The notes beneath the pieces were generated by a model that searched no databases, was not told the DNA's origin, and saw only the letters and a list, made by a program, of their open reading frames with translations. From assembly GCF_963853765.1 (NCBI RefSeq), contig NC_088858.1, forward strand, positions 1,054,001 to 1,118,000: a stretch of 64,000 bases of DNA, in the 5' to 3' direction. This DNA is from Magallana gigas. Its lineage: Eukaryota. Made by a program: the position numbers and the translations under genes. How positions within the stretch are numbered: the first letter of the stretch is position 1; each line of letters opens with the position of its first letter. Of this stretch, positions 7,198-33,866 are shown piece after piece.

Positions 7198-7257
7198 CTA
7201 TAAATCAAACTCCTCTCCCACTCGATCTGTGCTGCGATTCAGGTCTTCTTCTTTGGC
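7198..7257 (-). CDS. FERM gene candidate terminal exon 14 (AKEEDLNRSTDRVGEEFDL*)
   Basis: Acceptor attctatgcttctag|gcc, phase 0, coding-like composition, TAG stop, then AT-rich 3'UTR-like sequence with AATAAA near 6013. Confidence 0.6.
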   Translation of the reverse strand, partial: AKEEDLNRSTDRVGEEFDL

Positions 7258-9339
7258 CTAGAAGCATAGAATAATGCATAATTATGCAATTATATTAATG
7301 TTTTAAGAAGGAATCTTTTTTAAGACAACAAAATCAACGGATTTTATGCACAACTTGTCAGTTATAAGGTGTTATTAAATAAAAATCACAATAAATTCTT
7401 AAAGCAAATTTTTGACAAACACCAAAAGCTGGAACTATATAGGATATACTGTATGTACAGAGTAGATACATGTTTCATGGAGCAGACAAGAAAGATAAAT
7501 CCTTTAATTTACTACACTAAGCCAACAACTCTCCATGGAGAGAAAGCAATGTATGAAATTCTAAACAACACAGGGTGGATATATGAAAACTAAAACACTC
7601 ATTGTCTCTTTCTCTCTGTCTCTCTCATATCCACACAAATGAACAACAAGAAAACCGAGAGTCGGCCCTGAATATAACTACATGTATAAACACATGTAAG
7701 TCACAGACAAAATAAGATATAACACTTAATGCATGTGCATTGGTATATACAGTAGATTCCTAACTAAACGCGAGGAATTAATATCCGTGTAAAATTGCAA
7801 GAGGCAGATCTTTTAAAATCTCACTTTTATTTTTTTTTCAACCAAATGTTAACTAAATAAAACTATTCAAAATAACAATTCTGTGTGTCCGATTTTATAT
7901 TCTCGCGATTTGATGCAAAATGGTTGAATTGCATAATAAAGTACTCGCGTAGAATAAGGAATCTACAGAATAAAGGTATATAAAGAATATTTTTCATCAT
8001 TCTGCCCTTATAAAATATTGTTAATTCAAATCATGCTTTAATTGATAGATGCAATTATGATTGTCAGTATTAACCGATCTGATCCAATCGCAAACTGAGA
8101 ATAAATAAAAGATAAACATCTAGCATGATCAAATGGATGCACCAAGGTTACGAGGGAATCGGTTCTTACTGTAAACGCCTTGTTATGGTAGGACTGAAAC
8201 AGAAACAGCCTCAGGTTAATGTTAGCACTGACTCTGTATAATTCAGGGATCAGATCAAAAGTTGACAGAATTTCAGGAGGCAGGGTGGTCATGGCCACTT
8301 TATAGCTCTTTTTTACACGTTAAAAAAGAAACATTGGATGAAATTTTTGTAACTACGTGTATGGTTGCTAGTGCTTGTTATGGGAAAAAAACAGTTAACT
8401 GAGAAGAGAGGTAATAATTGATTTTTACGGAGTCATGATATAAGTTGTGATTTGGGTAATTAAAATTTAGCATGCTTGAAGATGTGTTTATGAACCAAAT
8501 ATTAACCATCCAACCTCCTTAATAATTTATGAAACTTAATAATTATACAGGTTAGCAATCAATTTTTTTGTTGATATACTAATTCTTCAAGAGCTATAAA
8601 ACATTAAATGTAGATTTTATTTACAAATAAAGAGGAGATAAGAGGTCCTGTTGTGTAATATTTAGAGAAACAGAAAACTAAGAGAACAATGTAGCAGAGG
8701 AGAAATGACCTTAAATCTAGCTTTGTTATTACAAACAGTGTAAGGAGCACCCAACACAGCAATCCAGAGTGATATACAATAAGCCACAGTAAAAACCAAT
8801 TATGATTATACTGGAAACAGTTAAGTTCCATAAAATTTGGAATTGTGTTCATCTCATTACATCTAAGAATGATCAGCTATTCATTGCTAATTTTTTTTCT
8901 GAAAGTTATATATACATAATTTTTTTCTTCAAAAAAAACTGATCATCACTCAGTTTTTATTCTTCATTTTGATTTTTCTTCAAAAAATCTTCCTACTGAA
9001 ATCAAGAAAATATATGCTGCAAAAGAGTTCTAAATTACTGAAATTCAAGCATAGGCTTACAACCAGGTATATTTAACTTACACACAAAAAATATCCCCAC
9101 GGAGATTTTGCACTAGACTTGATTAAACTCATAGTTATCTTATTATTTTTTTTTATCTAGCTAAATAATAAATCCTGGGTGCAAGCTTTTATATCTACAT
9201 CTACAAAGCGTTCAGAGACCTAGGTCCCTGTCTAGATGTGGGTCATGGATCACCGTAAGACCAGTAGATACACTGCGGTACGTCTATAGCCTACTGTTAG
9301 TACAATGTAGAAGCGAGGAAGCAGTTAGTGTGCGGAGAG

Positions 9340-9489
9340 TCACACCGTGTGATATGTAACCTGCTCGTCCTTGGGGTCGCCTTCTCTATCAGACCCCTCC
9401 TCCGAGCCCTGGTCAGCTCGATTACTCCCAGAATCCTCAGCACGATCAGCCCTCTTAACTTCCTGTTCCTCAGCCTCACGAGGCTCAGG
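9340..9489 (-). CDS. FERM gene exon 13 (PEPREAEEQ...EQVTYHTV*); may instead use an internal donor to join exon 14
   Basis: Acceptor cctgtaattag|cct, phase-compatible with exon 12, acidic open frame ending in TGA. Confidence 0.65.
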   Translation of the reverse strand, partial: PEPREAEEQEVKRADRAEDSGSNRADQGSEEGSDREGDPKDEQVTYHTV

Positions 9490-12893: not shown

Positions 12894-13235
12894 CTTGTCA
12901 TCTTTCTGTTCCTCAAAGCTGCTCATCCTTCGTGGTGCCCTGTCCATCGTCACGATGGTTTCCGAGGTAGCAGACACGGCCACGGCTTCCTGCCATTTCT
13001 CCTCCACCGCCGGCTTCTTCTTCTTTTCCTTGGCCAGCCGCTTCTTCTCCTTCTCTTCCTCTTTCTTCTTTCGTTTCTGTTCTTCTTTCTCTTTCTTTTT
13101 GCGCTCCTTCTCTTCTTTCTCGCGCTTCTTTCTCTCCTCCTTACTGAGGAGTTCCGGGGGGTCGAGAGGTGGGGAGGGAAGGTCGTGCACACTGGGAGGT
13201 TCTTGCTGGGTGGGAGGAGCATCAACTGACCTTTC
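12894..13235 (-). CDS. FERM gene exon 12 (Pro-rich then Lys/Glu-rich charged helix)
   Basis: Acceptor ttgtag|gaaagg and donor aag|gtcagt, phase 0/0, compatible with the phase-0 donor at 20865. Confidence 0.75.
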
Positions 13236-15510: not shown

Positions 15511-16121
15511 ATCTTAGTTTTATGTTAACACTGGGACTAGAGCAGAATCATCAACTATAAGTACAAGCCTGGACCATTATCACAGAATCAAGCAAAAAAT
15601 CAAAATAAATACAACAAATCTAATCTTGTCTACTGTACATAATAAACATAATCATTCAAAAAAGGACTTACAAAAAACAATAAATGTAGCTGAACAATAT
15701 CTAATAAGAAAACAAAGAACTAAGTACTATATATTTATACATGTACTTTTAAGTACTGTCTTTAACTTCTACAGAAGAAACAAATCGTCTAGCAATTGGA
15801 AAGTCACTTTCTTTAACACGTACATATTTATTATTTCGGATTATAAAATACTTAGACACAGGTGTAAAACTTGAGCACTATCTTAATTCTTAAATATTAG
15901 TTAGCACATATCACAAAACTTTACAAACCTTACAGACATGTGTACAAAGTTTACCGTCCTGTTATGACATTATTCCTAAACTTAAGTTATACAGAAAAAA
16001 ATCAAATACATGTACCCGCACAAAAATTTTGTAACCCATGCATTCATTTTTTACTAAGAACAATATAAATGAAATTGTGATTTGTGATGCCAAACGGATG
16101 TTTTAAGTCCTCAAGTTTGAC

Positions 16122-19100
16122 TCAGATGAACAAAAAGAGCATTGAGACAAGAAATATCAGTATTGCTAGGAATATCTCCGACAGGATATACACTGACTCT
16201 GGGCTCTCTGGGCGGACAACCAAAGCACTTAACCTTTTTGCACTTAAAGTCCTAGCCAGCATGGTGGGAACTTCTCTTACGCTGTGCTGAGGTTCTGGTC
16301 GACTGCCTTCCTTTTGTCTTACAGATTGAGGAGGTTCCGGTTGACTGGTTTTCTTTGGACCACAGGAAGTACTTGCCGCTTTGGTGCTTTTTTCCTGCTC
16401 TCGAGGCTTCTCCCTGATCAAAGTCTCTGGATGATTATCTGTGCTGTATTCTGTCAATCCCAGTTCTGCTTCAAAGTCTGAGCTTTCAGACTCGCAGAGA
16501 GGAGCTGCTTCTCTTGTTTTAAGATCCTTCCTATTTCTGTTTGTTTCAAGTTTACCTTTACTTTCAGCTTCTTCTTTACTTGCTGTAACACCCCTTCTTC
16601 CCATCATTGAGCTGTCTAAGTAATCTTTTCCTTGTCTCTCACTTGCAAGTTCTCTTTGAGCAATAATTGGTATGTTTTCTACTTCTTGTTTTGAGTCTTT
16701 TATGAAATTAATATCTTTCTTCCATGCATTTTCACCTTCTGTTTCCCTATTCTGAACAGAATGAACACTGTCTACAGAATGAACACTGTCTACAGAATGA
16801 ACACCGTCTACAGAATCTTTTCCTTTCTCTTGCTGCTCTTGCTTCTTTGCCTCCATTTTCCTGGTAGTTCCCTGAAGAGATCCATCAATGTAGACCTTTT
16901 TCTTTGGGTTTTCATTGTACAGCCTGCTTGAGACATTGTGGAACATGGCTTCCTTTGGATACATCTGATATGACCTACTGACATAAAAGTCACCAGGTTC
17001 TCTTTGACTTCTGACCAAGTCTGTGGTGTTTCTTGTGTGATTTGAGCTCTGTTCTTTTTCTCCTTTGCTCATATCATGGTTCAGTTCCTGTAGCTTTGAA
17101 GATATGTCTGACGGAGACTCATAGTCAAGAGTTGTATTGTTTTGATGGATATCTAGTTTCATTGTTGTGTCTTGGCAATCTTTCTTAACCCAAATACTAC
17201 CACTATTACCAATATTTTTAACAGATGCAGTGTTATTCTCTTTTTTGTAAATTAAAGTATTTTCCTGGACTTCAGCTTCTTTACCAATCTCTCCCTCACT
17301 CTTAGCACACTTGCTGCTTCCTTCAGGACCTAATTCTTGTTCATTTCTTTTCCCCTCCTGCTCTACCTTCCTGTCTCCTTCACCTTCTGCTGCCTCAACC
17401 TTTCCACTGAAGTTTTCATCAGCCCCTCTTTTCTCCTGGATTGTAGTGTCTTCTTTACCTTCTGCTACATCTATCTTCAAACTGGAATGTTCATCAGCTC
17501 CTCTATTCTCCCGATTTGTAGTGTCTCTTGTGGTTGCTTGTTTTTCCTGTTTGTCTAGCTCATCTGTCCCATGGAGGAATCTCTCTGAGTGGGACAGGAC
17601 CCACTTTGCAGTGCTGCCATATTTGTTTCCTGATGACTTTTGCTTTTGTTTTCCAGATTGGCAATCTTTATCCTGTTTGGAACACCCATCGAGCTGCTGC
17701 TGAGAATTTGGCTCTTTTTTAGAGTCTGTAACTTTTGGAGGAGTGACATTTGGAGATAAAGTGCTCTTTGATGCCAATGGGGTCATGATTTTCTCAGATT
17801 TATTTTGCTGTGTTGATGTTATTGTTACATTCTTTTTTGGAGGGATGAAAGTCAAAGGTTTGACAGGTGCAGACTTCCTGTTCCAGTCTGAGAAAGCACT
17901 GTGGGATTGACCACTGGAATTCTGGGAGGGCTTACAGACACTTGCTGCTGTAGATGTAGAGGGACTAAGTGTAGACGAAGAGCTGCCAAGTGTAGAATTA
18001 CTGTAGCTCTGGGAACTTGGAGTTGTACCCTGGGTTGAAACTATTGCACACACTGAGTAGCTTATATAGGGCTTATCCACAGGTGAGCTCTGGAAAGAAA
18101 CAAAAGTCGAGTTTCTCTGAGATTCTCCAGACTTGCTGACACTGAGAATACCCTGACTTTGGTTATCAATATATGACTGATCAACTGGAGGAGAGGCATT
18201 TGTTGCAAAAGATGAATTTGTTGATGTGTTGTTCTCCTGGACTAAGACTCCAGGAACACATTGTTTTGCTACAGCAGCAGTGGGTGTGAATCGTTTGTCA
18301 TCCTGTACTGGTGTACAAACCCCACTATCACTAGTCAATGGAGCGCTGTCAGGCGTGGAGAAATTTGGATCATTCTGTGACACTGAATGGCTGTCTCTTG
18401 CAGCTCTGACAGGTAGAGAGCTAGAAGGGGACAAGACAGAACCAGAGCTGATTGGAGTCTGAATTCCTTGACGCTGTTTTTCATCAGAGACATGGACGAA
18501 AGCTGTTTTAGGGACACACGCTTCCTTTCCTAGTAAGGAATTTTTTTTACTGTCATCTTCCACTTTTAGTTCATGGCTCTGTTGTATTTTAGTCTCCAAG
18601 TCTTCATGATCTAAACCTGAAACTTGGTTTCCATCCTTGGAAGCATTAGCAGCATCTAGAATGTTCCTGGATATTTCTACAGAGGTAGTTGGTTTGGTAT
18701 GGGATGCTGAAGGCTTTGATGATTCTTCGAAAGAGTTCTCAGCTTCTTTGAATAAACTTCTGCAAACATTTCTCTCTGTCATCATGTGACTCTCTTTCTC
18801 TGACTGAAGTGGAGTCAGATCATCACAAGGTTTATTAGCACAAATCTCTTCCTTATCTATTTCTATCACTCTGTCACTTTCACTGGTTCTTTCCTTGAAT
18901 GTATTTAGAACATCATTTTTTACTTGAGATCTTCTTGATATTGGGTTCTCCGACACATAAGATTTATCTTTCAGAGAATTGTCATTAGAAAATCCTTCTT
19001 CATGGTGAAAACCCTCCTTACATGTATATTCATCCCGATCTTCTTCTGAGATCTTTTTTTCTGCTGGCATCTTCAGACTTTTCTGCAGCAGTGTCCTATG

Positions 19101-21166
19101 GGTTTTGGATTCCTCCAAAGGAGCCTCATTTTTAGGTGACCGTGGAGAGGATTCTGGGGTACAAGAGCTAGATGACCCGTCTGAGTCGCTGAAATACCTA
19201 GGGAGAGATGGGGTGGGTGGGGAGGTCTCTGACCCTGACATCTGGTCATCTGAGTGACAGTCATCAATAAAGTCAAAATCCAGTTTCTGAGGGGACCCAC
19301 TGGACTTCTCCTCATCAGAGAACCCATGCCTCAGCTCATACACTAGATTGTCCTCACTGGAAAATCGGACTTTTTTGCTGGCTGATGGAGGGTTCTTGGG
19401 GGCACTGACCTCTCCCCCCAGTGTGACTGACCTTGCTCTTCTTACACACGGTTCATTGTCGTATTCCTGGAGAAAATCATCCACACTGGCACTTCCTTCC
19501 TCTGAAGACAGTGACAAGATGGAGGCTGTACTGTTTGTCCAGGCATCTCTTCCATCTTCCATCCCATTCCTATTTCCATCATGTTCATCTTCCGCTGTAC
19601 CATGAGCTGTAGTCTTTGTTAATTCTGTTTTTATTGAAGGGTCTTCATAAAGAATTTCCTCCACTAATCTCTTCTCATTCACTAAATCACAATGGTAACT
19701 ATCAACTTCACTTTCATTCAGAATGTTGCCAGTTGAGGAGGTAGATTGAGGGCCTGCGGCGAATCCATAGTACTCAAAACTGTCATGTAGCTCCATCTCC
19801 TCTGGAGGATCCTTAAGGTTAGAGCGAAGGATGCTGTCATCAAGGGGTTTCTGATCCCGGGGGCTTTTGGAGGCTTCAGAATCAGGCTTTCTGATGATGT
19901 ATTTCTCCAACAAAATGGCTTCATTGTTTTTATAGCTGAAGCTGTCCTCTGAATTACCAGGACTTTCGTTATAGAAAGCTCTTCTTTCCATGGCTTTTTC
20001 TGAAGGAGCAATTCTATAGTTCTTGCTAAGACTTTTAGTACCAAGTTGTCTGTGTCCTGGTTCTGAATCCAAGTCTTGGATCACAAATCCAGATTTCTCC
20101 AGACTGACTCTGGCTGGTGGTGACTTGACATCAGCCTGGGCCTTCTGTCTGTCTCTTCTACCTTTCTGTCTGGTGGAGTTAACCTTTTTCTCCTCGAGCT
20201 TTACATCAGCTCTGTGGTCATCATCCGACTCTGAAGAGCTGTACCGATACAAACTGCCACCAAATGAGATCTGACCCTGTGTGGACTCTGAACTTCTGTG
20301 AGCCTTGTCCATCTCTGTATTTCCACCTGTTAGTTCTGGACTGCGGTCAAATGAACCGGATTTAGAAGAATTTGCACAACTAATATTACTATCATTTTTC
20401 CTTCCAGATGCATTTCTCTCGAAAGTGTCAGAGAAACCTTCATCCACACTGGAGTTGAAATCGCTCTCTTTAAGATTTCTCCTGACCTTCTGATTATACT
20501 GAAGAGGATTCCTAGGAGTGGATGTCATGGTTGACTGAACATTCAGTGGGCTGTCCATGCTTGATTGACTGCTGGTTCTCTTCTTAAGGTACCGCCCCTT
20601 GGGCACTGACAATTTCTGAGGCCAAAGTTCACTGTCACTCCTGCTAAACTGAGAACTAGCACTTCGGAGACTTTCTTCATCAAACGACACCTTCTTGAAA
20701 TTTTCGCTTCCTGTACGCTGGCGCCCTCTTTGCCGTTTTAGATTAGGTTTAGTTAATGAGCTATGTGAGCTACTTTTCTGATTAGTGTCCTTCACAATCC
20801 ACATATTCCCTGAGTTAGTATTAGCATGTGTATACTCTAGATTATATAGTCTGTCAGTACGTACCATGTCATCCTCCGCTCCCTCTCTATCGTCCGCTTC
20901 CTCAAATGATCGCCGCCGGCGGTGGTGGTGCTCTAAGTTGTTGTTCACTGGGGCATCCTTCTTCATCACTGCTGCAAGTGGAGTGGGCACTGCGTGCATC
21001 CTCTCCATGCGACTCTTCCTGTTGTCAGGCCCCTCCTCCTCGTCATCATCAAACACATCCTCCGGCTCTCTGTTATGGATCTCCGGTTCCGGAACCTTCT
21101 TCATCATCTTCTCCTCACGGTTGTACTCTGGGATGTGTCTTGGCTCTGGGCGAGGCTTAAACATTT
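16122..21166 (-). CDS. FERM gene exon 11, long form: giant (5045 nt) terminal exon encoding a disordered Ser/Glu/Lys-rich region and a C-terminal TM segment. The short form is 20865-21166.
   Basis: Acceptor cattgacag|aaatg in phase 1 with exon 10; 1683-codon stop-free ORF ending VYILSEIFLAILIFLVSMLFLFI*; internal donor atg|gtacgt at 20865/20864. Confidence 0.85.
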
Positions 21167-21464: not shown

Positions 21465-21658
21465 CATCATGAAGGTCTTTGTTCTTGGTTCTGCCGTGAT
21501 ATGTAGCGCGACTGTGAACCCGATCAAAGAACGGGGAGGGGCGGTCCACGCCCATCATAGCCTGCTTGGTCTGGAAGTGGGTGCGACCGGAGTAGCGGAA
21601 CTTGGATCCAAGTCGGAGCAGTCCCCTTTGTGTTCCAGGTGAGTCTGGCTCCCTGTTC
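21465..21658 (-). CDS. FERM gene exon 10, FERM-adjacent (FA) domain
   Basis: LLRLGSKFRYSGRTHFQTKQAMMGVDRPSPFFDRVHS matches the 4.1-family FA motif; canonical ag/gt boundaries. Confidence 0.92.
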
Positions 21659-21925
21659 CTGTAACACACACAGTCAAATCATCATCAATCCACTGCCAAC
21701 TTATCTCATTTTTTCTATCTTCCTAGTCAATTCTTAAAATCACTTTCTTTTCCCTATCTCTTTTCATCATCTTCTTTCCTTTTTGGTTATCAAACATGAA
21801 TCAATTGACATTAAATTATTTGTTTCCCCCTCTCTCTTTCTTTCTCTTTCTCTTCCTCCTATCCTACCTCTTACAATATGTGATATATTTTATGGGTTAT
21901 ACATAAGTATATGGCAAGTATTTAC

Positions 21926-22023
21926 CTAAAGAAAGCATGGTTTTCTACACAGATTTTCCACATGCGTTTAGCGTGCCTGCTTGACATAAACTTGAATCCA
22001 ATCAAGCTCTGGAACTCTTCAAA
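21926..22023 (-). CDS. FERM gene exon 9 (FERM C-lobe)
   Basis: FEEFQSLIGFKFMSSRHAKRMWKICVENHAFFR; ggcag| acceptor and |gtaaat donor. Confidence 0.92.
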
Positions 22024-22158
22024 CTGCCAACGAAATGTTTCATGATCAGAAATCCATTTAAGGTAATTAAGGTAATTAATGAACAGGACAATGTCGTGAC
22101 AGTCGTCCCTGAATAAGCCTTACTGGATTCAGACACAACAATCTACAACTGTTCTTAC

Positions 22159-22311
22159 CTCCCCGGTTCGTAACTTGATGTAGAACTTCTTTCTCCTGTA
22201 CGACATCTTCAGAATCTTTGGCCACACAAATTTGTTGATTTGGAGTTTCTCCCTAAAGACTAGGATTCCACTCCAGCACACGCCTAGCTGTATGTCGACA
22301 TTCTCCCCATC
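22159..22311 (-). CDS. FERM gene exon 8 (FERM C-lobe)
   Basis: DGENVDIQLGVCWSGILVFREKLQINKFVWPKILKMSYRRKKFYIKLRTGE; donor |gtaaga. Confidence 0.93.
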
Positions 22312-22799
22312 CTGCAAAATCAACAAATCGTAAAACCAAGTGTCTAAATAAACTCAGCCATATCAGCTAAATGTCTGTATTCTCCTCGACTTGACAAAAA
22401 TCTATCATTCATAAAATCTCAGTTACTCATTGATACCAGTAAATTTCTACAAATCACCATGTCTTAACAAAAATCAACAAATACTCTGTATACAGGGTTA
22501 TTTTCGCCCAGTGTAATTTTTGCCCCTCTAAACTTGCAAACAGTTTTGCGCTGTCTTGAATTTTCCAAGACACAGTTGAGTTTAAAGAGAGATCATTTGA
22601 GACGATAAAATCTACCCTTAAATTTTCTGGCTGACAACGAGGGCGAAAGGACGAAATAAAAAAAAATATTTTCCTGCAAACAGTAGTTCAGACACACTTG
22701 CAAAATATCAGTTTTTAATTGACTAAAGAGCACAAAATGAAATAAATTACTATCGAGCATACAATGAGATAAATTACTAACGAGCACACATATAAGATG

Positions 22800-23045
22800 G
22801 AGCACACTGCTCAGTGGTTATTGGCGTTAGCCCAGTAACCGAAAGGTCAATGGTTCAAACCCCACAGTGGTCACTTAACTTAGACAAGGCACTTCATCTA
22901 CATTGTTTAAGTCCACCCAGCTGAAATTAGGTACCGGCTTATGCTGGGGGTTAACCTGTTATGGACTGGTGTCTCATCCAGGGGGAATCAGTGACTTTAT
23001 CCGCTTAGCACCATGGAAACTGGGAATAAGCACCCGCCGTATGTG
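22800..23045 (+). mobile_element. tRNA-derived SINE in a FERM intron
   Basis: A box tgctcagtgg, B box ggttcaaacc, then a SINE-type body (caaggcacttca...ccacccagctg...ggtacc...ctgttatggactgg...catccagggg). Confidence 0.75.
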
Positions 23046-23089
23046 ATGTGCCTTCAAGGACACATATAAGAGAAAATGAAGATGTCTAC

Positions 23090-23177
23090 CTTTGCATTAC
23101 TGAGGTCCACTCCATACATCGCAAGTTTCTTGGCGTTTTCCAGGAAGTGTAACTCTGCTGCTTCTGGTGTCTGACCC
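23090..23177 (-). CDS. FERM gene exon 7
   Basis: [29 protein letters not shown], the 4.1-family [14 protein letters not shown] motif. Confidence 0.95.
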
Positions 23178-23446
23178 CTGAAAAAGCCAGACAGTCATTT
23201 TTGGGTTTTGGGAATTTTGACAAATTTTCATTAAAAGTAGAGTTTGAAATGCTGACCTTGGTAGATTTTCATAATTTCAACTCAGCAAGTTAACTTTATT
23301 AAAATGATCACAATCTATTTCTTCATTATATTTTTCTTTAATTTGGCAAAACTTAACTTTTGCAGCACACCATAATTTACTGTATAAACTGAAGGATAAG
23401 TATATATCAAGTATATGTTTAAAATTGAACAGTTTTCATCAATTAC

Positions 23447-23626
23447 TTATGAGTCCTGTGAAGCTCTGCAATCTTCTTCAACAGTTCGCGGTCTTGATGA
23501 GGAGCGAATCTCATTTTTCTGATGTACTCTGTTCCAGGACCGAATTCATCGATGTCGAAATCTCCTAATTCTGATTGGACGGTATAGGAGCCGAGTAGTG
23601 CGTATGTCACCGCAGAGCAGGGAAGC
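23447..23626 (-). CDS. FERM gene exon 6 (FERM central lobe)
   Basis: LPCSAVTYALLGSYTVQSELGDFD...LLKKIAELHRTHK. Confidence 0.95.
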
Positions 23627-24182
23627 CTAAGATACAATAATAGAAATGCTACATGTGCATCATTCTGTTAAATGTATTCAATTTCTTTACCTGTATTATC
23701 TGAGGCCATCTTTTCATAAAGTTTTGGTTGCTATATTTTGACCCAGGGCTCAAACTTATGGTTGGTAGGTACAGCTCTGTCATGTAAACAAGTTTTTTTT
23801 TCTTGGGGGTTAACGAGTTTAGATGAATTCTTGACCTTGCACCTTTAGCCATCATAATTATTCAGTTGTAATTGGTAATACGAGAATTGAATTTGATTGA
23901 AATTTTATAATTTTTAAAAATATCATCGGAAATATGCAAAGAACTTTTAGGCAGCCTTGCTTCATGATGATTTGAATGAATTGTACGTGTTTGGAGCTTG
24001 TAATTGTGTTGATTTTTAAAATAGATCCTTAATGGGGCTATTTTAATTGTTATCTAAACAGGATTAGGGAGGTCACATCTTATTAACTGCTTTGTGGATT
24101 CCTTACTTGACAAGGACAAACACACTTAGTGACACTTACACACCCTTTTGTATCTTTCTCTGGCAAAATAGACACAAAATAT

Positions 24183-24186
<4 letters not shown>

Positions 24187-24234
<48 letters not shown>
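24187..24234. repeat. (CT)n microsatellite; a (GA)n tract also lies at about 29742-29780
   Basis: Read directly from the sequence. Confidence 0.95.
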
Positions 24235-24235
<1 letters not shown>

Positions 24236-24369
24236 ATAATTGTCAGTAGCTTAGTGGTTTTTCAGAGCCACACTATGTTAAAAAATTCTGCAAAGAAGTG
24301 TGAAACACAGAGTAAACTGATTATCTGATTCTGTACTCAATGACATGTCAACCAATATTTATATTTTAA

Positions 24370-25332
24370 GGTAGTCCTACACTCGGCACTAAATGGGCTC
24401 AATCATTAAAAGCTTAGCTTTAAAAGATAAATATACATTCTAGCAATACATATTCAAAAGAAAATATGTATGTTTACATGCTAGTTTGGTTGTTATCACC
24501 TCTCAGACGGGTATACCCCCTTACAAAAATTATTGACAATTATGAAATTTGCCAGACGTCCGTTTTTCCTAAAAATAATTACAAAAATTTGGGAAAATTA
24601 GAACTGAACATACAAAATAGAGTAAAAATATTTATTTAAGCCATATCTCATTAATAATTTTGCGCAAGTTTTTGTAAGTAATTACGCTTTATGGACCTGA
24701 TGTATCAAAATAGAATACAAAAAATGCAATGCTAGTATCGCGTTTGGTAATTTTTTTACTATTTTATGGACTCAAACTTAAATTCATGGTGATTATTCTA
24801 TAGATTGACATCTTAGAAAAAAGATTTGGTAAAATAAATTATATGTTGACGGATTACTTTTCACGCTATAAGCTCTAAACCAAGTAGACCCTGACGAAAA
24901 AATCCGTAAAAATCACATTTTGCTACAGTTTTCTGCCTAGATCTGTCAACAATGTTAGATATCATTTAAACATTAATTAATTGACGATTGATTAAATTCG
25001 AAATAGCTTCTGTCTCTAAACCGGTTTTAGTAAAAGAAAAAGAAAAATTCGGGGGGGGGGGGGGTCAAAACAAAGAAGATATAAGCATACCTGAGATCCT
25101 GGTTAATCAGAAACTTCGTTTTTTATTTTACTTTAACATAATCGAGTTTCTCAACATTATTCATTTCTATCTCTCATAGAATACATATATTACCGTTCTA
25201 ATTGCTTATTATTGCCATTGTTTACAACAGCGATGTAGAGCAAAATCAATACCGGGTATCAAAAACGCTTTGTAAAAGCCGAACCAATATTGTAAAATCC
25301 GTATTATGACGTAGTGCGATACTCGGACTACT
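24370..25332. mobile_element. Kolobok-like non-autonomous DNA transposon
   Basis: ttaa|ggtagtcc ... ggactact|ttaa: TTAA duplication, purine-purine start and short TIR. Confidence 0.7.
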
Positions 25333-25817
25333 TTAAGTGAAAGTAGAAAATAATAAAAATGAATATAAACAATTTTATTCAATGAATTGTATTATAAACA
25401 CTTGAAGAGTATTTTTTCATACAATAAGTGCTTCATAATATGTTTATGTAAAGAGTAATCGAAAAAGTAATTATAATTAAACTGACCTTTTTAGCTGTAA
25501 TCGATTAAATTACGATTACAAGTAATCGAAAATATCTTTGATTACAGATTACTGTTGATTACTTGAAAAGAGTAATCATTACAATCGATTACGATTACTC
25601 AATTTCGATTACCCCATGCCTAGTAGGTAGAGATATTTTAAAAAATATTAGAAAATATAAATTAATTAAAAATATATCTGCTGACCATTGGATTTCAAAA
25701 GAAAGGTACTTTCTGCATGTCAGACAAAAGAGGTATTTATTTTAAAAAAATCCTTTTGATCCTGAAATTTCTTATCTACATTTTTAAAATCGTCATGATT
25801 TTCAATAGCTGACTTAC

Positions 25818-25862
25818 TTCTCATTGACAATGTCGTTTCTTATCTGCAGACACAGCTGGTAT
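25818..25862 (-). CDS. FERM gene exon 5
   Basis: (R)YQLCLQIRNDIVNE(K); ttgtag| acceptor and |gtaagt donor. Confidence 0.92.
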
Positions 25863-26140
25863 CTACAACACAAAACAAAATTAATTAGCTTTGATTCAAA
25901 ACAAAGAAAATTTTAAATAAAATTGATTTTCTCTGGGTAAATGGAGAAAGAAAACTTGTGAACAACTCAAGTTCAATCTGTTTCATTGAGAAAGTGGAGA
26001 ATGAGAAGAAAAGAAAACATACCATGGTTTAAATTATTTGTTTGTGATTAAGGAGAGGTCAGATTGGGGGGGGGGGGGGAGGAGGGGGGTGTGTGGGGGG
26101 GAGGTAGGCATTAAGGGGGTGAATTATACTATAGACTCAC

Positions 26141-26216
26141 CTAGTAAGGTCCTCGTGCAGTGTCTGAGGATCTGGGGGGTAGAACTTCACCTCAAACTTA
26201 AACTCCCAGGCCAGAC
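26141..26216 (-). CDS. FERM gene exon 4
   Basis: GLAWEFKFEVKFYPPDPQTLHEDLT(R); donor |gtgagt. Confidence 0.93.
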
Positions 26217-26854
26217 CTACAAAGTTAAATTGATAGAATAAATGCATCATGAAAAAGTCTGGTAAATTGGTACCCACAATAGGATCAGAATTGATTTTAT
26301 CAAATTTCTTTTCTTTTCTATTTATTACTGTCTATAACCAAATTTCTCACTTTTATTTTTCATTTTGCCTGTGCAAAGAACAATATTGATTTAGATTTTA
26401 ATCTTCAAAATGTTACATGGAATTTATGACGTGATCGGCATTCATATACATGTACTAACAGTGATTGCATACTTGATTGCTGTAACAAAGTCCATACAAA
26501 GCTGCAGCATGCTAAGATAACATAGGTAATCATAGATTACGAAGCTCACCGAGAAGGAGCATCACCCTTATGAGACATCACCTTCATAAGACCACCTTTA
26601 TCATTTTATATGGAAATCATACTTTATGATCTTGGATATTCATGGATTCTGTTTTGACAAAATATCGTGTATCATCTGATAATTTTTTTTCGGATAATCA
26701 TATGTTCATATGTTAATCAATTCAATGATATAAAATTAAATATTGCATCATGTCATATTTATAATATATATCATATAATACAATAAAATACCGTAATAAA
26801 CAATAATGAGATATGATATTGTAACGTATGATATGACATTGTATTTTGTTATAC

Positions 26855-27231
26855 TTTCATGTTAAATACTGAAATCTGATTGGTTAAGACGCAGTTAATA
26901 ATATTTACTATTACCCTCAGCGTTAGCAACGCACTTGGCAACGGGTAACATTAAAAAATGTTACATGCGCGAAAATTATGCGCGTACGGTTCGCTGTAGA
27001 ATTCACGTTATTCCTATATAAAAGCAGTAAAATTTTCTTAAAAATTATTTTTAAAAAAGACATTCAGTATAACAAAATAAATAGTGCCTGTTTGGGAGGA
27101 TAACAGTTGAAATTGACACCCCTCGAAAACCATTGTCAACCTCCGCTTCGCGTCGGTTGACAATGGTTTTCTCGGGGTGTCAATTTCAACTGTTACCCTC
27201 CCAAACAGGCACTATTTATATAGTGTTATAC
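26855..27231. mobile_element. TIR-less element with a long subterminal hairpin, nested in the HINE AT tract
   Basis: Absent from the first HINE copy; flanked by tgttatac direct repeats; inverted repeat 27078-27218 with ~63-bp arms. Confidence 0.75.
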
Positions 27232-27351
27232 CTTATTGTATTTGATCACATAATACAATATCATAAAATATAATACAATATAGTATTATATTACAATATC
27301 ATATTGCATAATACATCATAACATTGAAACATGATATTATATTGTATAATA

Positions 27352-27868
27352 TTATTTTCATGCATTATAACGTATTCTATCATTGGTTCTTTTGATATCA
27401 CGTGTCAAAGTATAAAAATGCGAATTGACCTGTACTTTCTAAAAATAAGCTTTAAAAACTCGGATTGACCTGTACTTTCTAAATATAGATAAGGAAAATT
27501 TTCCTCTAATGTTAAAATGAATTTGATTGGCTGGCCTGATTCACCCCAACCAATCAAAATTCTCTCCGCGTAAACAAACAACAAAGATGGAAGTTGCAGA
27601 CAGGATATTTCGTAAATTTCGAGTGCGAGAAGTTAGACGACCTGCTAGCTAAATTTTACATGGAAGCTAGAACAACGAATGGAGATATGTATATAAAGAC
27701 TTCGAAAATAATGTAACGAATGTAGTCCTTTCACTCAGTCAATCCATAGATATATCGACTTCACAGAAAAGCATATCGTCCTCGCACTTCGTGCTCGGTC
27801 GATATGCTTTTCTGTGAAGACGATATATCTATGGATCGACCTCATGAAAGGGCTATATTTGTATAATA
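27352..27868. mobile_element. Second TIR-less long-hairpin element nested in the HINE AT tract
   Basis: Absent from the first HINE copy; flanked by ttgtataata direct repeats; inverted repeat at about 27722-27857. Confidence 0.75.
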
Positions 27869-29667
27869 TAGTATGATATTGTATTGAATGACACTGAAAC
27901 ATATTTGATACATTATATGATATTATATCATATTATACAATATGATTTGATTCCAACATTGTATCTTATCAAATGATACAATATTATGTGATAAAGTAAA
28001 ATATTATAAAATACATTATTGTATTATACATATTGTATCATATGACACAATAATATATATTACAATACCATATAATACAATTTCATGTGATATGATAATA
28101 TATCATATAAACCAATATCATATCACACAATATCGTATGATACCATATTATATAATATCACAATATCATATAATACAATTTCATGTGATATAATTCTATA
28201 TTACTGAAACTAATATCATATCATACAATATTGTATGATACAATATAATATTTTGCAATATCTTATGTAATTGTATCATGTGATAAAATAATAAATTAAA
28301 AATACAATATAATATTATACAATATTGTATCATAATATACAATACTATACATAACAATATCATGATACAATATCATATCATAAAATATAAAAAAAAAAAT
28401 GATACAATATCATATCGTATCGTATAACTTTTTATAACTAATATAACAAATGATATCATATTGTATAATATCAAACAATATTGTTTCATATCATACAATA
28501 CTTTATCATAGGAATCATGTTATATCATTTATCAACAAACACATCTATCTATCGAGCTGGTTTGAGTGAGGTAGGAGATTTCTTTAGCATCCTTGATAAT
28601 GGAGATCAGGCTCTGCATTTGAAGCAACCTCTGCGTTTCATTTATAATATAGTTAAATCAACTATGCAAGCTTTCATCTATAAAACATGTGACCTGTTCC
28701 AAAAAACTAAACCTCATCCAGCATCCGAAACCTATGGCTCAGATTCAGCATTCAAGCCCATCAGGTCCATTGGTATCATAAGACGCATCATCCATGCAAG
28801 TTTGGTGAAGTTTGGACCAGTAATAACTAAGATAACATCATCAGAGGGCACTAGCAATTAAAACCTTTACTTCGTCCAGCATCCGCAACCTATGGCTCAG
28901 ATTCAGCATCCATGCCTGTCAGGTGCATCTGTATCATAAGACACACCATCCATTCAAGTTTGGTGAAGTTAGGACCAGTAGTAACTAAGATATAATCATC
29001 AGAGGGCACCTGCAACAAAAACTTTAACCAGCTCTAAAAACCTTAACCTCTTCCAGCATCCGAAACCTATTGCTCATATTCAGCATTCAAGCTTGTCAGG
29101 TGCATCAGTATCATAAGATGCATTATCCATACAAGTTTGGTGAAGTTAGGACCAGTAGTAACTTAGATATTGCTATCAATGGGCACCTGCAACAAAAACT
29201 TTAACCTGCTCCAAAAACCTTAACCTCCTCCAGCATCCGAAACCTATAGCTCAGATTCAGCACTCAAACCTGTCTGGTGCATCAGTATCATAAGACACAC
29301 CATCCATGCAAGTTTGGTGAAGTTATGACCAGCAGTAACTAAGATATTGCTATCAAAGGGCACCTGCAACAAAAACTTTAACCTGGTCCAACAACCTTAA
29401 CCTCCTCCAGCATCTGAAATTTAGGACCCAGATTCAGCATCCAAGTATTTCAAGTCCATAAGTAGGTCCAGATGCATCATCCATGCAAGTTTGGTGAAGA
29501 CAGGACAAGTAATAGCTTAGATACAGGACCTGCAACAAAAACTTTAACCAGGTCCGGACGCCGACGCCGACGCCACCGCCGACGCCGAGGGTATAGCATA
29601 AGCTCTCCTTGACTTCGTCTCGGTGAGCTAAAAATGAAATTAAATGCATGACTGAATTTTTTACTAC

Positions 29668-29710
29668 CTTTCATTTGCTTGGATATCTTTTTCTCTACAT
29701 TGAGCCATTC
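29668..29710 (-). CDS. FERM gene exon 3
   Basis: EWLNVEKKISKQMK(G); cttgcag| acceptor and |gtagta donor; phases join exons 2 and 4. Confidence 0.9.
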
Positions 29711-29739
29711 CTGCAAGACAACAAAACTGAGTTATTAGT

Positions 29740-29784
<45 letters not shown>

Positions 29785-31912
29785 ATCTTTGGGCTTTGTA
29801 TTGATCATATCGATTCTTTTTAAACTAACAGTGTGAAGATCTAATTACTTACTAGTTTTACAGCGAAATTGATGAAAACCCTTCTCATATGTTAATTAGG
29901 CATATGCTCTTGAAATATTAATTAGCATAGACATGGGAAAGTTAACTCTTTGTCAGATAATACAAACAGCTACAAAACAATATATGTTGGCATTATGCTA
30001 TTTCTTGGGGTCTGTGTATTTGGAGGGGGTGGGGTGGGGGGTCATTGTGATTTGACTCTCTCTTCCATGTGTCAGGGTCCCTGACGTATTTACATCGGTG
30101 GTTAGCTGAGTGGGCTTATCACTGTGAATTACTCGACCGTCCTCAAGGAACAACAAATCAACTGAACTACAGTGTCATTCGGGTCTGTAGAATGTTTACT
30201 CAAGGGAAGCTACTGTGTGATAACAACTCCACACATAGGCACTGGCCCAGGGAATCACAAATGACTTTACAGCAAACAACAGTCAATAATCTCAAAATAT
30301 TCTGCAGTTATTGACTCGCAGTCAAACAGAAGAATAATTTATCATGTTTATCACTTGTTTTCTTTCTGCTGTAATACTTCAAAATAATATGACCTAACTT
30401 AATAATTCAGTTGACTTGCATTTCTATAAAAAAATGAACCTCAATTTTCATAACATTTACTACCGGTAATTTGCCTGAAACAGCTTGATGGTAATGGAGC
30501 AGTTCATCATAATTTAAGCCCTCGCCCTTGACCTGATATAGACAGGTTCAGAGTTTGTGTTCTTTCCCCTCAGAGAACTAATCAATCAAAATGAACAGGT
30601 ATTGATTCAATGCAAATGCCTCTGAATTAATGCTATTTTACTCTTCCTCACAGAGTTCAAGTTAATTCTTTGTGTTTTGTAGTAAATTAGTTGACAGATG
30701 ATTTGTTGATGGATGGTTGAATTCCGTGCTCAGGTAAGTCCTGATTAGACAGGATCTACAGGTATTATACAGGTGTATCTCACCTGGATCAATGATTACC
30801 TGCACCCGGAAGACCATGAAAACCGAGTTACCTGACATATATTAAGGTCACCCAAAAAGAAGTAAACAATCTTCTCCAGCAATATTTCAATTTTTCTTCA
30901 ATTCATTCAGTTTCAACTAAATTTTCAATACATTTTTACATATGATAAAACTTGATCTTGCTGTGATCAAACAAAAGATGGATTTTTCGTGCCTTTATTA
31001 GATTTGTTTAATCTTTATGAGCTTTGGTGTCTGCATTGAATTTAACAACTAGCGCATCTAGGATTTCTCACAATTTACGATGTGTGTTTTACTTAGCGAT
31101 CATGGGAATTTTGCTGTAAATTTAACAGTTCAATCAATTTAAATGCCCACCTCCCAAAGGACGACAACAGAAATCATCACCTCAGTGAACAGGATTACCC
31201 ACCAAATTATCGAGGACACTCCATTAAATCTAGTTCTGGTGAATTGACCCCATAAGACACATTACATCAGGTGACACCCCAATAATAGAACCAAGGTGAC
31301 TGACCCCAGAACAGACCGTCCATAAAGAAAACTTGCACTAGTTCAAAGGCTGCACTATTTTTTATAATTGTTTTTACTTTAAATAATTGTCTATTTACAT
31401 GCACTTTAAGAGTACATTTTTTTCAAATATAGCGTACATTTACAATAAAAAGATGTAAACAGTGTATACTGAGAAAATACCAGAATGCCAACATTTTCCT
31501 TCATGAACTATTGAGCAAACCGTGCAGGGTTTGGATATCTTGTGGTTTATTACCTGATAATAAAATCACACTTATACAAGTGCTGCCCGCAGAAAACATT
31601 ATAAATAAGACACTTTAGCTGCTACTGAATTCTTGTACATGTATAATACATGTATATGTTTTCATCATGCATTCTCTGTTTTTTTACCATCCACACAACA
31701 GTGAAAAACAGACATATCAATAGCTTATATATAACATGTATATGGTTTCTTTTTTTATTGTTTTGTACTAGAACTAGAAAACTGACCAGTCAGGAAGGGC
31801 CCCGCTATGACAATTAATATAGAGAAGTGAAAAAAACTTTGAATTCCATCCTCTTTATATTAACAATGATGAAACATAAATGCCCAGCAGAAGATGTAAA
31901 GAACTGGACTAT

Positions 31913-32047
31913 ATAGGATCTCATGATTTGTAGTTGGATATGATTTTCATCCAACAATTAAAGTGTTTTTTTCTTGAACCTTAGTTAGGGGATAAAACAC
32001 ACAAGTTGGATAAAAATCATATTATACTGCAAATCATGAGATTCTAT
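31913..32047. repeat. Long imperfect palindrome, probably another hairpin-type element
   Basis: ataggatctcatgatttgtag...catccaac is inverted as gttggataaaaatcat...gcaaatcatgagattctat. Confidence 0.7.
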
Positions 32048-32659
32048 TTATCCCATATTTTATACACCGCAATCAATGTTTACACTGTTTATAAAACTCT
32101 ACATTATTTTACTTCATTATGCCTAGGCAAATCCCATTGTAAAGTCACAACTGTGGGATATCAAAAAAATATCCAATGAGTCATATCCACGGGATAAAGT
32201 GGGTTAACATGGGATGAAATAAAATTTGTTAAAAAAACAAAGAATTGATACCAATGCAATGATACCTAGGCTTTGCCTCTATTCAATAAAATTATTATAA
32301 ATCATTGTATTTTAACCGAAATAAAATATGAATATTATATTTTAAATCCATATTTCAAAGAATGTACACAATACTATACACATCATTCAAAATTGACCTT
32401 AACTTCAAAACAAAGTTCATTTGCAGACACAGGCAGTGCAGTAATTAATCTCAATGTGACAGATAAAGATAAAGCTTAGGATTTTCTTCCTGTGGAAGGT
32501 TAATTAATCCCAAAGGACAAATATTGCACAGCCTTCCATGTATACAACGGTAACATTCTCAGCAGTTATCTCTCTTTGCCCATTCATTCTCAGCAGTTAT
32601 CTCTCTTTGCCCATTCTTCTTATGCATAGTTAGGAATCTACCCCACCACCCCAGCTCCA

Positions 32660-32880
32660 AACCAGAAGACATAGAGAACCAAACTTAGCATCAAAATATG
32701 TATTTCTGCCTACTGAACTACCATACCAAATTTGAACTTGATTGGGCAACCATAAAAAAAGTTATTAGAAAAAAACAGGAAATTTGTGGACGGAAGAGTG
32801 ACAGACGGACGGACAGAAGGACGGACGGACAGAGTGATTACTATAGGGCACCCGCAAATCCTTGCGGGGCCCTAATAATT
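32660..32880 (-). mobile_element. pearl/HINE-type element fragment
   Basis: (ACGG)n-like microsatellite followed by the self-complementary end agggcacccgcaaatccttgcggggccct. Confidence 0.8.
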
Positions 32881-32896
32881 ATTGATTAAAAATATT

Positions 32897-33764: not shown

Positions 33765-33866
33765 CTGAAAGTTAAAAAAAAATGAGATTGAATATGTCTG
33801 TTGACCATGAGCCCAGTGTATACTTGTTACTATGGTAACCTGACTGAATGATGCGGAACTACTTAC

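What the first reader, a model, noticed from the sequence alone, without database searches (positions are those of the whole stretch)
16122..21166. Protein 4.1-family FERM gene with a splice switch to a giant, tail-anchored isoform
Seen: exon 11 has a good phase-0 donor (atg|gtacgt, 20865) that joins the Lys/Glu-rich exon 12, giving a soluble isoform of about 600 aa. If the donor is skipped, the frame stays open for another 4.7 kb and ends in about 20 hydrophobic residues at the extreme C-terminus (2042 aa in total). Established: canonical 4.1/coracle proteins are peripheral and end in SAB/CTD domains, none of which I could find here, and a TM helix at the very C-terminus defines tail-anchored proteins. 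Inference: one locus may encode both a soluble cortical adaptor and a long FERM-to-membrane tether, for example an organelle-to-plasma-membrane spacer.
Basis: partly seen in the sequence, partly recalled or inferred. Interest (0 to 1): 0.8.

Follow-up and report, generated by a model that had tools for sequence, protein, structure and literature searches.

The report
Oyster 4.1 gene's giant tail-anchored isoform
An oyster gene of the protein 4.1 family makes a common short soluble protein. When one splice site is skipped, it very probably also makes a roughly 2,040-residue protein that ends in a conserved membrane anchor; scallops and Solemya share this design, and no paper I found describes it.

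Summary
On the minus strand, exon 11 (acceptor at 21166) has a phase-0 donor, ATG|GTACGT, after 20865. RNA reads show that donor joined to the Lys/Glu-rich exon 12 at 13235.

If the donor is skipped, the frame stays open for 1,580 more codons, to the stop at 16124-16122 (chance about 1e-53). It ends in the only hydrophobic segment of the 1,680-residue exon product.

The extension is real coding sequence. dN/dS is 0.37 against a related oyster. The last 25 codons show 5 synonymous and 0 non-synonymous changes. The stop position is the same in the three oyster loci compared codon by codon.

PolyA RNA covers the extension at roughly 5-25% of the level of exon 11a. In the better-covered run it continues through the stop and about 300 nt of 3'UTR to an AATAAA.

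Gene models for Pecten, Argopecten and Solemya have the same layout: a 4.1-type FERM-FA, a giant disordered exon and a C-terminal hydrophobic tail. The FERM domain groups with true 4.1 proteins, and no CTD was found.

Not shown:
- a single mRNA in this species joining the FERM exons to the tail;
- where the anchor inserts;
- any tethering function.

A third isoform, giant but soluble, made through distal donors at 16323 or 16281, is possible.

FERM-FA proteins with a C-terminal membrane segment are already known (FRMD3/5 type), so I class this as a new variant of a known kind. The scan's earlier notes hold no previous finding of it.

The parts
21925..33965 (-). Coding exons 1-9, encoding the FERM domain. 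The ATG is at 33965. Exons lie at about 33965-33867, 33764-33657, 29710-29668, 26216-26141, 25862-25818, 23626-23447, 23177-23090, 22311-22159 and 22023-21926.
   Evidence: tblastn with the Saccostrea model P0005 and the C. gigas model P0142. Splice sites were read. The best solved-structure matches of the orthologous Saccostrea FERM-FA (P0005:1-362) are EPB41L3 (9e-123) and 4.1R (1e-106).
21465..21659 (-). Exon 10, the FERM-adjacent (FA) region. Its last base plus the first two bases of exon 11 form a Glu codon.
   Evidence: Pfam FA PF08736, E 4e-14. The unmatched read ends at 21167 match the end of this exon.
20865..21166 (-). Exon 11a, the part shared by all isoforms. It carries the motif RKSRME(R/K)MHAVPTPLAAV, which scallops and Solemya also have.
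   Evidence: Depth is 13.6 and 37.5 in the two polyA RNA runs, with spliced reads at both ends. Motif matches are. dN/dS is 0.055.
20859..20864 (-). Proximal donor GTACGT, phase 0. Using it gives the short soluble isoform; skipping it gives the giant one.
   Evidence: 12 and 27 reads are spliced here to exon 12. The donor is ATG|GTACGT in four oyster loci and ATG|GTATGT in L004; the scallop protein reads ESM|VCT at the same place.
16125..20864 (-). Giant read-through extension of exon 11: 1,580 codons, Ser-rich and predicted disordered, with a few conserved short islands.
   Evidence: Open frame. dN/dS is 0.23-0.56 by segment. Islands are mapped. RNA depth is about 1-11 against 13.6-37.5 for exon 11a, and no joints were reported inside it. 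No Pfam family matches.
20682..20696 (-). KKVSF, an RVxF-like candidate docking motif for protein phosphatase 1. It sits in the island FKKVSFDEESLRS.
   Evidence: Pattern scan. Present in all five oyster sequences. Scallops have KKSVSF(E/D)E at the aligned place. Binding is not tested.
19362..19376 (-). KKVRF, a second RVxF-like motif, in the island SKKVRFSSEDNLVYEL.
   Evidence: Pattern scan. It lies in a conserved block of the five-species oyster alignment.
16194..16304 (-). Conserved segment just before the membrane helix: (V/I)P(T/S)MLxR(T/R)LSxKRLS....RPESPE. It holds basophilic-kinase and Ser-Pro type sites.
   Evidence: Alignments A1 and A2 list the invariant columns. Phosphorylation is inferred from the motifs only.
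16125..16193 (-). C-terminal hydrophobic helix VYILSEIFLAILIFLVSMLFLFI, a predicted tail anchor with no residues after it.
   Evidence: Kyte-Doolittle maximum 2.74. Against L003 it has 5 synonymous and 0 non-synonymous changes; dN/dS is 0.06-0.08 against C. virginica and Saccostrea. Many synonymous differences are visible codon by codon.
16122..16124 (-). Stop codon TGA of the giant isoform.
   Evidence: The stop is at the same position in Saccostrea (TGA) and C. virginica (TAA).
15800..16121 (-). Probable 3'UTR of the giant isoform, with AATAAA at 15832-15827. It would mark a polyadenylation site inside the intron between exons 11a and 12.
   Evidence: AATAAA lies 289 nt after the stop. In polyA run X22 the depth is 3.9, then 1.7, then 0.2 across 16100, 15900 and 15500. 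The exact 3' end was not seen.
16275..16322 (-). Two candidate distal donors, TCT|GTAAGA (exon end 16323) and AGC|GTAAGA (exon end 16281). Both are phase 0 and compatible with exon 12. Using either would remove the anchor.
   Evidence: Read from the sequence. UniProt K1Q988 joins ...PEPQHS|ERSVD. An X2 contig ends at 16322 and depth falls from 54 to about 11-14. The GT is not conserved in P0002 (first site), P0004 or C. virginica. Use of these donors is not proven.
12894..13235 (-). Exon 12, Lys/Glu-rich, 114 codons, phase 0 at both ends. It belongs to the short isoform.
   Evidence: Splice sites. RNA junction with 20865. A similar Lys/Glu-rich frame lies about 6 kb beyond the giant exon in Pecten; its raw tblastn match is weak (E 0.12), and the likeness is by reading the translation. 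Haliotis 4.1 also has a Lys/Glu-rich stretch, seen by eye only.
7198..9489 (-). Exon 13 (about 9489-9361, acidic) and the last exon (about 7257-7198, ...DRVGEEFDL, then the stop) of the short isoform.
   Evidence: tblastn with P0005 and splice sites. The boundaries are approximate.

Best explanation
This is an oyster gene with a true-4.1-type FERM-FA head and no CTD. The first exon after the FA region has two fates.

In most transcripts the donor after 20865 is used. The message continues to the Lys/Glu-rich and acidic exons and gives a soluble protein of about 600-650 aa. This step is shown.

In a minority of transcripts the donor is skipped. The exon then runs on for 4.7 kb to a stop at 16122 and ends at a polyadenylation site inside the intron, near 15.8 kb. 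The product would be about 2,042 aa: FERM-FA, about 1,650 disordered residues carrying a few conserved short motifs (including two RVxF-like ones), then a C-terminal membrane helix. Expression and selection on this extension are shown. Its physical link to the FERM exons is inferred from the continuous frame, the lack of a conserved internal start codon and the scallop and Solemya gene models.

Most likely mechanism, by inference only: the helix is very hydrophobic and no charged residues follow it, so it would be inserted after translation into the ER membrane. The FERM head would bind plasma-membrane proteins or lipids. The long form would then be a membrane-fixed scaffold or an ER-to-cortex tether, and the splice choice would set the ratio of free adaptor to anchored form.
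For: - Splicing at 21166 and 20865, and the in-frame junction to exon 12.
- A 1,580-codon open extension, chance 1.4e-53, with a single hydrophobic segment at the very end.
- Purifying selection: overall dN/dS 0.37, and 0 non-synonymous against 5 synonymous changes in the helix. Synonymous-only differences and a conserved stop position in Saccostrea and C. virginica. The tail is the most conserved 30-residue bin of the whole exon.
- Strand-specific polyA RNA covers the extension. In run X22 it continues at body level through the stop and 3'UTR, and no joints were reported inside.
- An X2 RNA contig runs from the extension 17 nt into exon 11a, across the unspliced donor.
- In L004 the first Met after the donor is 350 codons downstream, beyond conserved islands. 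In Pecten the KKSVSF motif comes before the first Met I can see in the stretch printed, which was not counted systematically.
- Pecten maximus LOC117334597 (3,026 aa), Argopecten (3,010 aa) and Solemya (3,331 aa) have FERM-FA, no CTD, and end in hydrophobic tails. In Pecten residues 371-3026 are one terminal exon directly after the FA exon, with the ESM|VCT donor inside it.
- The oyster profile aligns to the scallop proteins across the donor (E 1e-17) and, weakly, at the tail.
- Tail-anchor targeting depends on helix hydrophobicity and tail charge (PMC5450235).
Against: - No read, contig or database protein of this species joins a FERM or FA exon to the region beyond the donor. A search for bridging proteins was blank.
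- NCBI annotates the giant ORF as a separate gene in C. gigas (LOC109620730) and C. virginica (LOC144619460, nested in the 647-aa FERM gene).
- In runs X21 and X6 the depth over the extension is hardly above intron background.
- In X2 the depth falls about four-fold just before the tail. Two public models, K1Q988 and Saccostrea P0005, splice the anchor away.
- Membrane insertion, the target organelle, PP1 binding and tethering are all untested.
Confidence: 0.62

Rival explanations
1. The giant ORF is a separate, nested transcription unit. A promoter in intron 10 or in exon 11 would drive a tail-anchored protein of about 1,500-1,680 aa without a FERM domain, and the FERM gene would make only the short form.
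For: NCBI models it this way in C. gigas (XP_019929271.1, 1,515 aa, two transcript variants) and in C. virginica (LOC144619460). The bin that includes the last 134 nt of intron 10 leaves room for a little intron signal. Met codons exist at the start of exon 11 and in the motif SRME(R/K)MHAV.
Against: The ORF is always directly continuous and in frame with exon 11a, in five oyster loci and in Pecten; the Argopecten and Solemya protein models likewise run from FERM-FA into the giant region. No internal start codon is conserved: it lies 350 codons downstream in L004, and Pecten has no Met at the start of the exon. Independent models in Pecten, Argopecten, Solemya, Saccostrea and the 2012 C. gigas set all join FERM to the giant exon. 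Automatic pipelines often split off retained-donor exons in this way.
Confidence: 0.15
2. The giant exon is mainly an internal alternative exon. Distal phase-0 donors at 16323 or 16281 would splice it to exon 12, giving a giant soluble 4.1 isoform like the long coracle or EPB41L forms. On this reading the hydrophobic tail is a minor or unused read-through.
For: Two GTAAGA donors in phase with exon 12 lie 53-67 codons before the stop. UniProt K1Q988 (2,259 aa) uses the one at 16281. An X2 contig ends exactly at 16322 and depth drops from 54 to about 11-14.
Against: The tail and stop are strongly conserved as protein in all oysters, and an equivalent tail ends the scallop and Solemya proteins. 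That cannot be explained if the tail is never translated. The distal GT is missing in P0004 and C. virginica, and the first site is GGA in P0002. A polymorphism at exactly 16321 would therefore also explain the contig break. PolyA run X22 shows no drop at the tail, no loose ends were reported at 16322 or 16280, and an X6 contig runs unbroken from 15956 to 16785. This is best seen as a possible additional isoform in this species (about 35-40%), not a replacement.
Confidence: 0.15
3. Intron-retention noise: the read-through is unspliced pre-mRNA and the open frame has no protein product.
For: Extension depth is low relative to exon 11a, and in runs X6 and X21 it is close to the background further downstream.
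Against: A 1,580-codon open frame has a chance of 1e-53. It is kept open, with dN/dS well below 1, across oysters that differ by dS above 1. Depth is 6-8 times the downstream background in X22 and X2.
Confidence: 0.02

Closest known systems
True protein 4.1 family (EPB41, EPB41L1-3, Drosophila coracle)
   Same: The FERM-FA head is 59-60% identical to vertebrate EPB41L3 in the Saccostrea orthologue. In a tree it groups with Haliotis 4.1. Haliotis 4.1 also has a Lys/Glu-rich stretch resembling exon 12, by eye only. Large optional central exons and heavy alternative splicing are typical of this family (my own knowledge).
   Different: No CTD or SAB domain was found. The giant exon is terminal and ends in a membrane helix, which I found described in no paper on true 4.1 proteins. 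The Haliotis 4.1 locus has no comparable long ORF.
FERM-FA proteins with a C-terminal membrane segment (FRMD3/FRMD5 type; group b of Baines 2006, PMC1459144)
   Same: The architecture matches: FERM, FA, no signal peptide, and a hydrophobic segment near the C-terminus.
   Different: The FERM here is of the true 4.1 type. The protein is three to five times longer. The helix sits at the very end rather than some tens of residues before it (that detail for FRMD3/5 is from my memory). The anchor is optional, chosen by splicing. Direct comparison was not possible because no FRMD3/5 sequence was at hand.
Junctophilins and other tail-anchored ER-plasma membrane tethers
   Same: A plasma-membrane-binding N-terminal module, a long linker and a C-terminal tail anchor. 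This is a resemblance in layout only, from my own knowledge.
   Different: A FERM domain takes the place of MORN repeats, there is no sequence relation, and localisation is untested.
Existing database models: Pecten maximus LOC117334597, Argopecten and Solemya proteins, C. gigas K1Q988 and LOC109620730, C. virginica LOC144619460
   Same: They cover the same gene or its orthologues. The Pecten, Argopecten and Solemya models already show FERM-FA, a giant region and a hydrophobic tail.
   Different: All are unnamed or misnamed (uncharacterized protein; calponin homology domain-containing protein-like). The oyster models either split the gene or splice away the anchor. None notes the two-isoform design.

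Membership tests
True protein 4.1 family | Three-lobed FERM domain closest to EPB41/EPB41L | tested here: met
   Using the orthologous Saccostrea FERM-FA (P0005:1-362): EPB41L3 scores 9e-123 and 4.1R 1e-106, while FARP, PTPN3 and ERM proteins score far lower. The bivalve clade is sister to Haliotis 4.1, support 99/97.
True protein 4.1 family | FERM-adjacent (FA) region | tested here: met
   PF08736, E 4e-14, in the exon at 21659-21465.
True protein 4.1 family | C-terminal domain (4_1_CTD, PF05902) | tested here: not met
   No Pfam hit in the giant exon, exon 12 or the exon 13 frame tested. The precomputed domains of the C. virginica 647-aa product and of the Saccostrea, Pecten, Argopecten and Solemya products list FERM and FA only. 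Exons beyond the window's start cannot be excluded.
True protein 4.1 family | Spectrin-actin binding domain (PF04382) | tested here: not met
   No hit. Invertebrate 4.1 proteins are reported to lack a recognisable SAB in general (abstract of PMC3791450).
Tail-anchored membrane proteins | A single hydrophobic helix within about 30 residues of the C-terminus and no other membrane segment | tested here: met
   The Kyte-Doolittle 19-residue maximum is 2.74 at residues 1658-1680 of 1,680. The next best is 0.63.
Tail-anchored membrane proteins | No N-terminal signal sequence | tested here: met
   The N-terminus MGENRRITQVRTARSV... leads straight into the FERM domain with no hydrophobic start. This is by inspection only.
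Tail-anchored membrane proteins | Post-translational membrane insertion with the N-terminus in the cytosol | not testable with these tools
   Needs cell or in vitro insertion assays.
FRMD3/FRMD5-type FERM-FA-membrane proteins | FERM plus FA plus a C-terminal membrane segment, without a signal peptide | tested here: met
   The architecture is as described for group b in PMC1459144, matched.
FRMD3/FRMD5-type FERM-FA-membrane proteins | Orthology of the FERM domain to FRMD3/5 | not tested
   No FRMD3/5 sequence was available: none is in the PDB list, and they fall outside the length range. About 60% identity to EPB41L3 argues against orthology.
ER-plasma membrane tethers | Simultaneous binding of two membranes and localisation at contact sites | not testable with these tools
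   Inference from domain layout only.

The most novel reading that the evidence does not exclude
Bivalves keep a splice-controlled switch, old enough to be shared by oysters, scallops and Solemya. It would turn a true 4.1 cortical adaptor into an ER-anchored tether of about 2,000-3,300 residues. The disordered linker carries conserved docking motifs (RVxF-like, candidate PP1 sites) and phospho-sites next to the anchor. This would be a FERM-based counterpart of junctophilin, linking the ER to the cell cortex.
Probability: 0.3. Interest if true: 0.7.

Novelty: new variant of a known kind. Interest (0 to 1): 0.55.

Why it matters
Protein 4.1 is a textbook peripheral membrane-skeleton adaptor. A conserved isoform of a true 4.1-type protein that is itself membrane-anchored, chosen by skipping one donor, would add a new way of using the FERM head, possibly at membrane contact sites.

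It also corrects current annotation. The C. gigas and C. virginica records split the locus into two genes, and two other models splice the anchor away.

The hypothesis is directly testable with long-read cDNA and a tagged tail.

Tried and rejected
- Pfam on the giant exon found no family.
- A word search for short proteins bridging exon 11a and the extension was blank. This says little.
- Logan contigs L003, L004 and L007 were hoped to be transcripts. All contain introns, so they are genomic and give no linkage.
- A profile of the 52-residue tail, run against 1.84 billion representative proteins, found only oyster proteins. The scallop and Solemya tails are too diverged for this; the scallop tails were found through the FERM search and align only weakly, and the Solemya tail did not align.
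- My first idea was that the giant exon is purely internal and the tail is just translated intron. I dropped it as the main reading once the conservation of the tail was seen, and kept it as a possible extra isoform.
- The Saccostrea model's junction ...VYILSE|ERSVD uses the GT of a Val codon (SE|VF). The tail ORF is intact there, so I take this as a likely predictor artefact.
- The Haliotis 4.1 locus has no giant tail-anchored ORF.
- Literature searches for a tail-anchored 4.1 or FERM protein returned nothing relevant.
- Earlier notes of this scan held nothing on this gene.


Full report
**What is in the sequence**

The gene lies on the minus strand. The ORF list shows one exceptional frame, 21173-16122, in a window of 34% G+C where no other ORF exceeds 484 aa.

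The acceptor ttgacag|AAATG puts the first exon base at 21166. The donor GACATG|gtacgt puts the last base of the short exon at 20865, in phase 0. From 21164 the frame runs for 1,680 codons to TGA at 16124-16122. Given the window's composition, 1,580 stop-free codons after the donor have a chance of about 1e-53.

The last 23 residues, VYILSEIFLAILIFLVSMLFLFI, are the only hydrophobic stretch. The 19-residue Kyte-Doolittle mean is 2.74 there and at most 0.63 elsewhere. The rest is 15% Ser and 72% disorder-promoting residues. Pfam finds nothing in it.

**The gene around it**

tblastn with a Saccostrea cucullata model (P0005) and the old C. gigas model K1Q988 (P0142) places the exons as follows:
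- nine FERM exons between 33965 and 21926;
- an FA exon at about 21659-21465 (Pfam FA, 4e-14);
- exon 11;
- a Lys/Glu-rich exon 12 at 13235-12894;
- an acidic exon 13 near 9489-9361;
- a short last exon near 7257-7198.

The FERM-FA of the Saccostrea orthologue matches EPB41L3 (9e-123) and 4.1R (1e-106) far better than FARP, PTPN3 or ERM proteins. It is 59-60% identical to vertebrate EPB41L3. No CTD or SAB is detected here or in the orthologous products.

The giant ORF is 94% identical to C. gigas XP_019929271.1, so the window comes from that species or a very close relative.

**RNA evidence**

I used two polyA, stranded raw-read runs (X21, X22) and two contig sets (X2, X6). All signal is on one strand.

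- Reads stop matching the window at 21167 (14 and 32 reads) and continue with the end of the FA exon.
- Reads stop matching at 20864 (12 and 27 reads) and continue with GAAAGGTCAGTTGATGC, the start of exon 12. This gives M|ERSVDAPP in frame, which proves the short isoform.
- Depth over exon 11a is 13.6 and 37.5. Over the extension it is about 0-3.7 and 0-11.
- No joints were reported inside 15301-21300.
- In X22 the depth over the tail and the next 200 nt (3.8-3.9) equals the average over the body of the extension. It falls to 1.7 and then 0.2 beyond an AATAAA at 15832-15827, 289 nt after the stop. This fits a terminal exon with polyadenylation inside the intron.
- An X2 contig (18109-20881) runs from the extension 17 nt into exon 11a, so the unspliced junction exists in RNA.

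Weak points: in X21 and X6 the extension is barely above the background further downstream. No read links FERM exons to the extension.

**Selection**

Orthologous loci were fetched from Saccostrea (L001), C. virginica (L002) and two other oysters (L003, L004). All keep one frame from the exon 11 acceptor, through the donor (ATG|GTACGT in four loci, ATG|GTATGT in L004), to the tail. The stop position is the same in the three loci compared codon by codon.

Against L003 (dS 0.19), dN/dS is 0.37 overall and 0.23-0.56 by segment. The last 25 codons have 5 synonymous and 0 non-synonymous changes. Against C. virginica and Saccostrea (dS above 1), the helix has dN/dS of 0.06-0.08. The codon-by-codon view shows many synonymous differences in the helix.

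The body of the extension is only 30-50% identical between genera, yet the last 30 residues form the most conserved bin of the exon. Other conserved islands include FKKVSFDEESLRS and SKKVRFSSEDNLVYEL, both RVxF-like.

In L004 the first Met after the donor is 350 codons downstream, beyond several conserved islands. A conserved internal start is therefore unlikely.

**Beyond oysters**

A FERM-anchored search restricted to long proteins found three bivalve proteins: Pecten maximus LOC117334597 (3,026 aa), an Argopecten irradians protein (3,010 aa) and a Solemya velum protein (3,331 aa). All have FERM-FA and no CTD. All end in hydrophobic tails, for example ...TVLHILTEVMVLLLIWLVSIFVLTYDLSTGF.

In the Pecten genome, residues 371-3026 are one terminal exon directly after the FA exon. 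The donor context ESM|VCT lies inside it. A Lys/Glu-rich frame resembling exon 12 lies about 6 kb downstream, though its raw tblastn match is weak (E 0.12). So the same switch design appears to be present.

An oyster profile aligns to the scallop proteins from exon 11a across the donor to KKSVSF(D/E)E (E 1e-17), and weakly at the tail. A 52-residue tail profile finds only oysters among 1.84 billion representatives. The tail sequence itself therefore evolves quickly between orders, while its position and character are kept.

In a FERM tree the bivalve giants form a clade (100/98) that is sister to Haliotis 4.1, which has a CTD (99/97). The Haliotis locus has no giant tail-anchored ORF. Whether bivalves also keep a separate 4.1 gene with a CTD was not tested.

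**Competing readings**

1. Nested separate gene. NCBI annotates it this way in C. gigas and C. virginica. I find it less likely because of the invariable in-frame continuity with exon 11a, the lack of a conserved start codon, and the five independent models that join FERM to the giant exon.

2. Internal giant exon. Two phase-0 GTAAGA donors at 16323 and 16281 could join exon 12, and K1Q988 uses the one at 16281. In X2 a contig ends exactly at 16322 and depth falls from 54 to about 11-14. However, P0002 carries GGA at that very base, so a polymorphism would explain the contig break. The GTs are absent in other oysters. X22 shows no drop and X6 has an unbroken contig across the site. I keep this as a possible third, species-specific isoform.

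3. Retention noise is excluded by the conservation.

**How it most likely works**

Shown: the donor choice, expression of the extension, and selection on it and on the tail.

Inferred: the long mRNA starts at the FERM exons. The helix acts as a tail anchor. Because it is very hydrophobic and no basic residues follow it, the ER is the likely target, by the rule in PMC5450235. The FERM head would bind the cortex, so the long form would be an anchored scaffold or an ER-to-cortex tether.

The sites just before the membrane (RTLSAKRLS, RPESPES) and the RVxF-like motifs suggest control by phosphorylation. None of this is tested.

**Compared with what is known**

True 4.1 proteins are peripheral, and none with a tail anchor turned up in two literature searches. 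FERM-FA proteins with C-terminal membrane segments were, however, already listed as a poorly characterised group of the superfamily (PMC1459144). Gene models showing this architecture already sit unnamed in public databases.

I therefore class it as a new variant of a known kind, of moderate interest.

Noticed in passing
window 1-3843 compared with 7391-9867 and 12177-13542: The start of the window is a 97.6-99.1% identical second copy of the segment carrying exons 12 and 13. The copy lacks 9868-12176. It lies downstream of the last exon. It is either a recent tandem duplication of the gene's 3' part or an assembly (haplotype) artefact.
   Followed up: partly
window 38768-39868 (-): A single open frame of 367 aa has ankyrin repeats and a SOCS box (Pfam 3e-06 and 2e-06). 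It looks like an ASB-like gene upstream of the 4.1 gene.
   Followed up: partly
window 47333-48784 (+) and about 49810-52750 (-): Retroelement remains. One 484-aa ORF carries a reverse transcriptase domain (RVT_1, 4e-34). A second, fragmented element lies on the other strand; two of its frames gave no Pfam hit, and I take it for a retroelement from reading its translation only.
   Followed up: partly
window about 38507-38778 (-): The first 18 residues of the old C. gigas model K1Q988 match five places spaced about 50-60 nt apart. This is a tandem repeat, so that model's N-terminal extension is doubtful.
   Followed up: no
L002 (C. virginica) 2662-21752 and 10001-14995; C. gigas LOC109620730: Current NCBI annotation splits the locus into a 647-aa FERM gene and a nested uncharacterised gene. 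The Saccostrea model P0005 and UniProt K1Q988 instead splice the anchor away. All four records probably need revision.
   Followed up: partly
window 21032-21042: RNA reads and contigs show in-frame 6-nt insertions (TCCTCG, TCGTCT, TCTTCA) in the acidic DDDEEE run of exon 11a. This is a length polymorphism in an Asp/Glu repeat.
   Followed up: no
window about 15355: One X6 contig leaves the window sequence here, with more than 255 unmatched letters. It could be a structural variant or an insertion polymorphism in the intron downstream of the giant exon.
   Followed up: no
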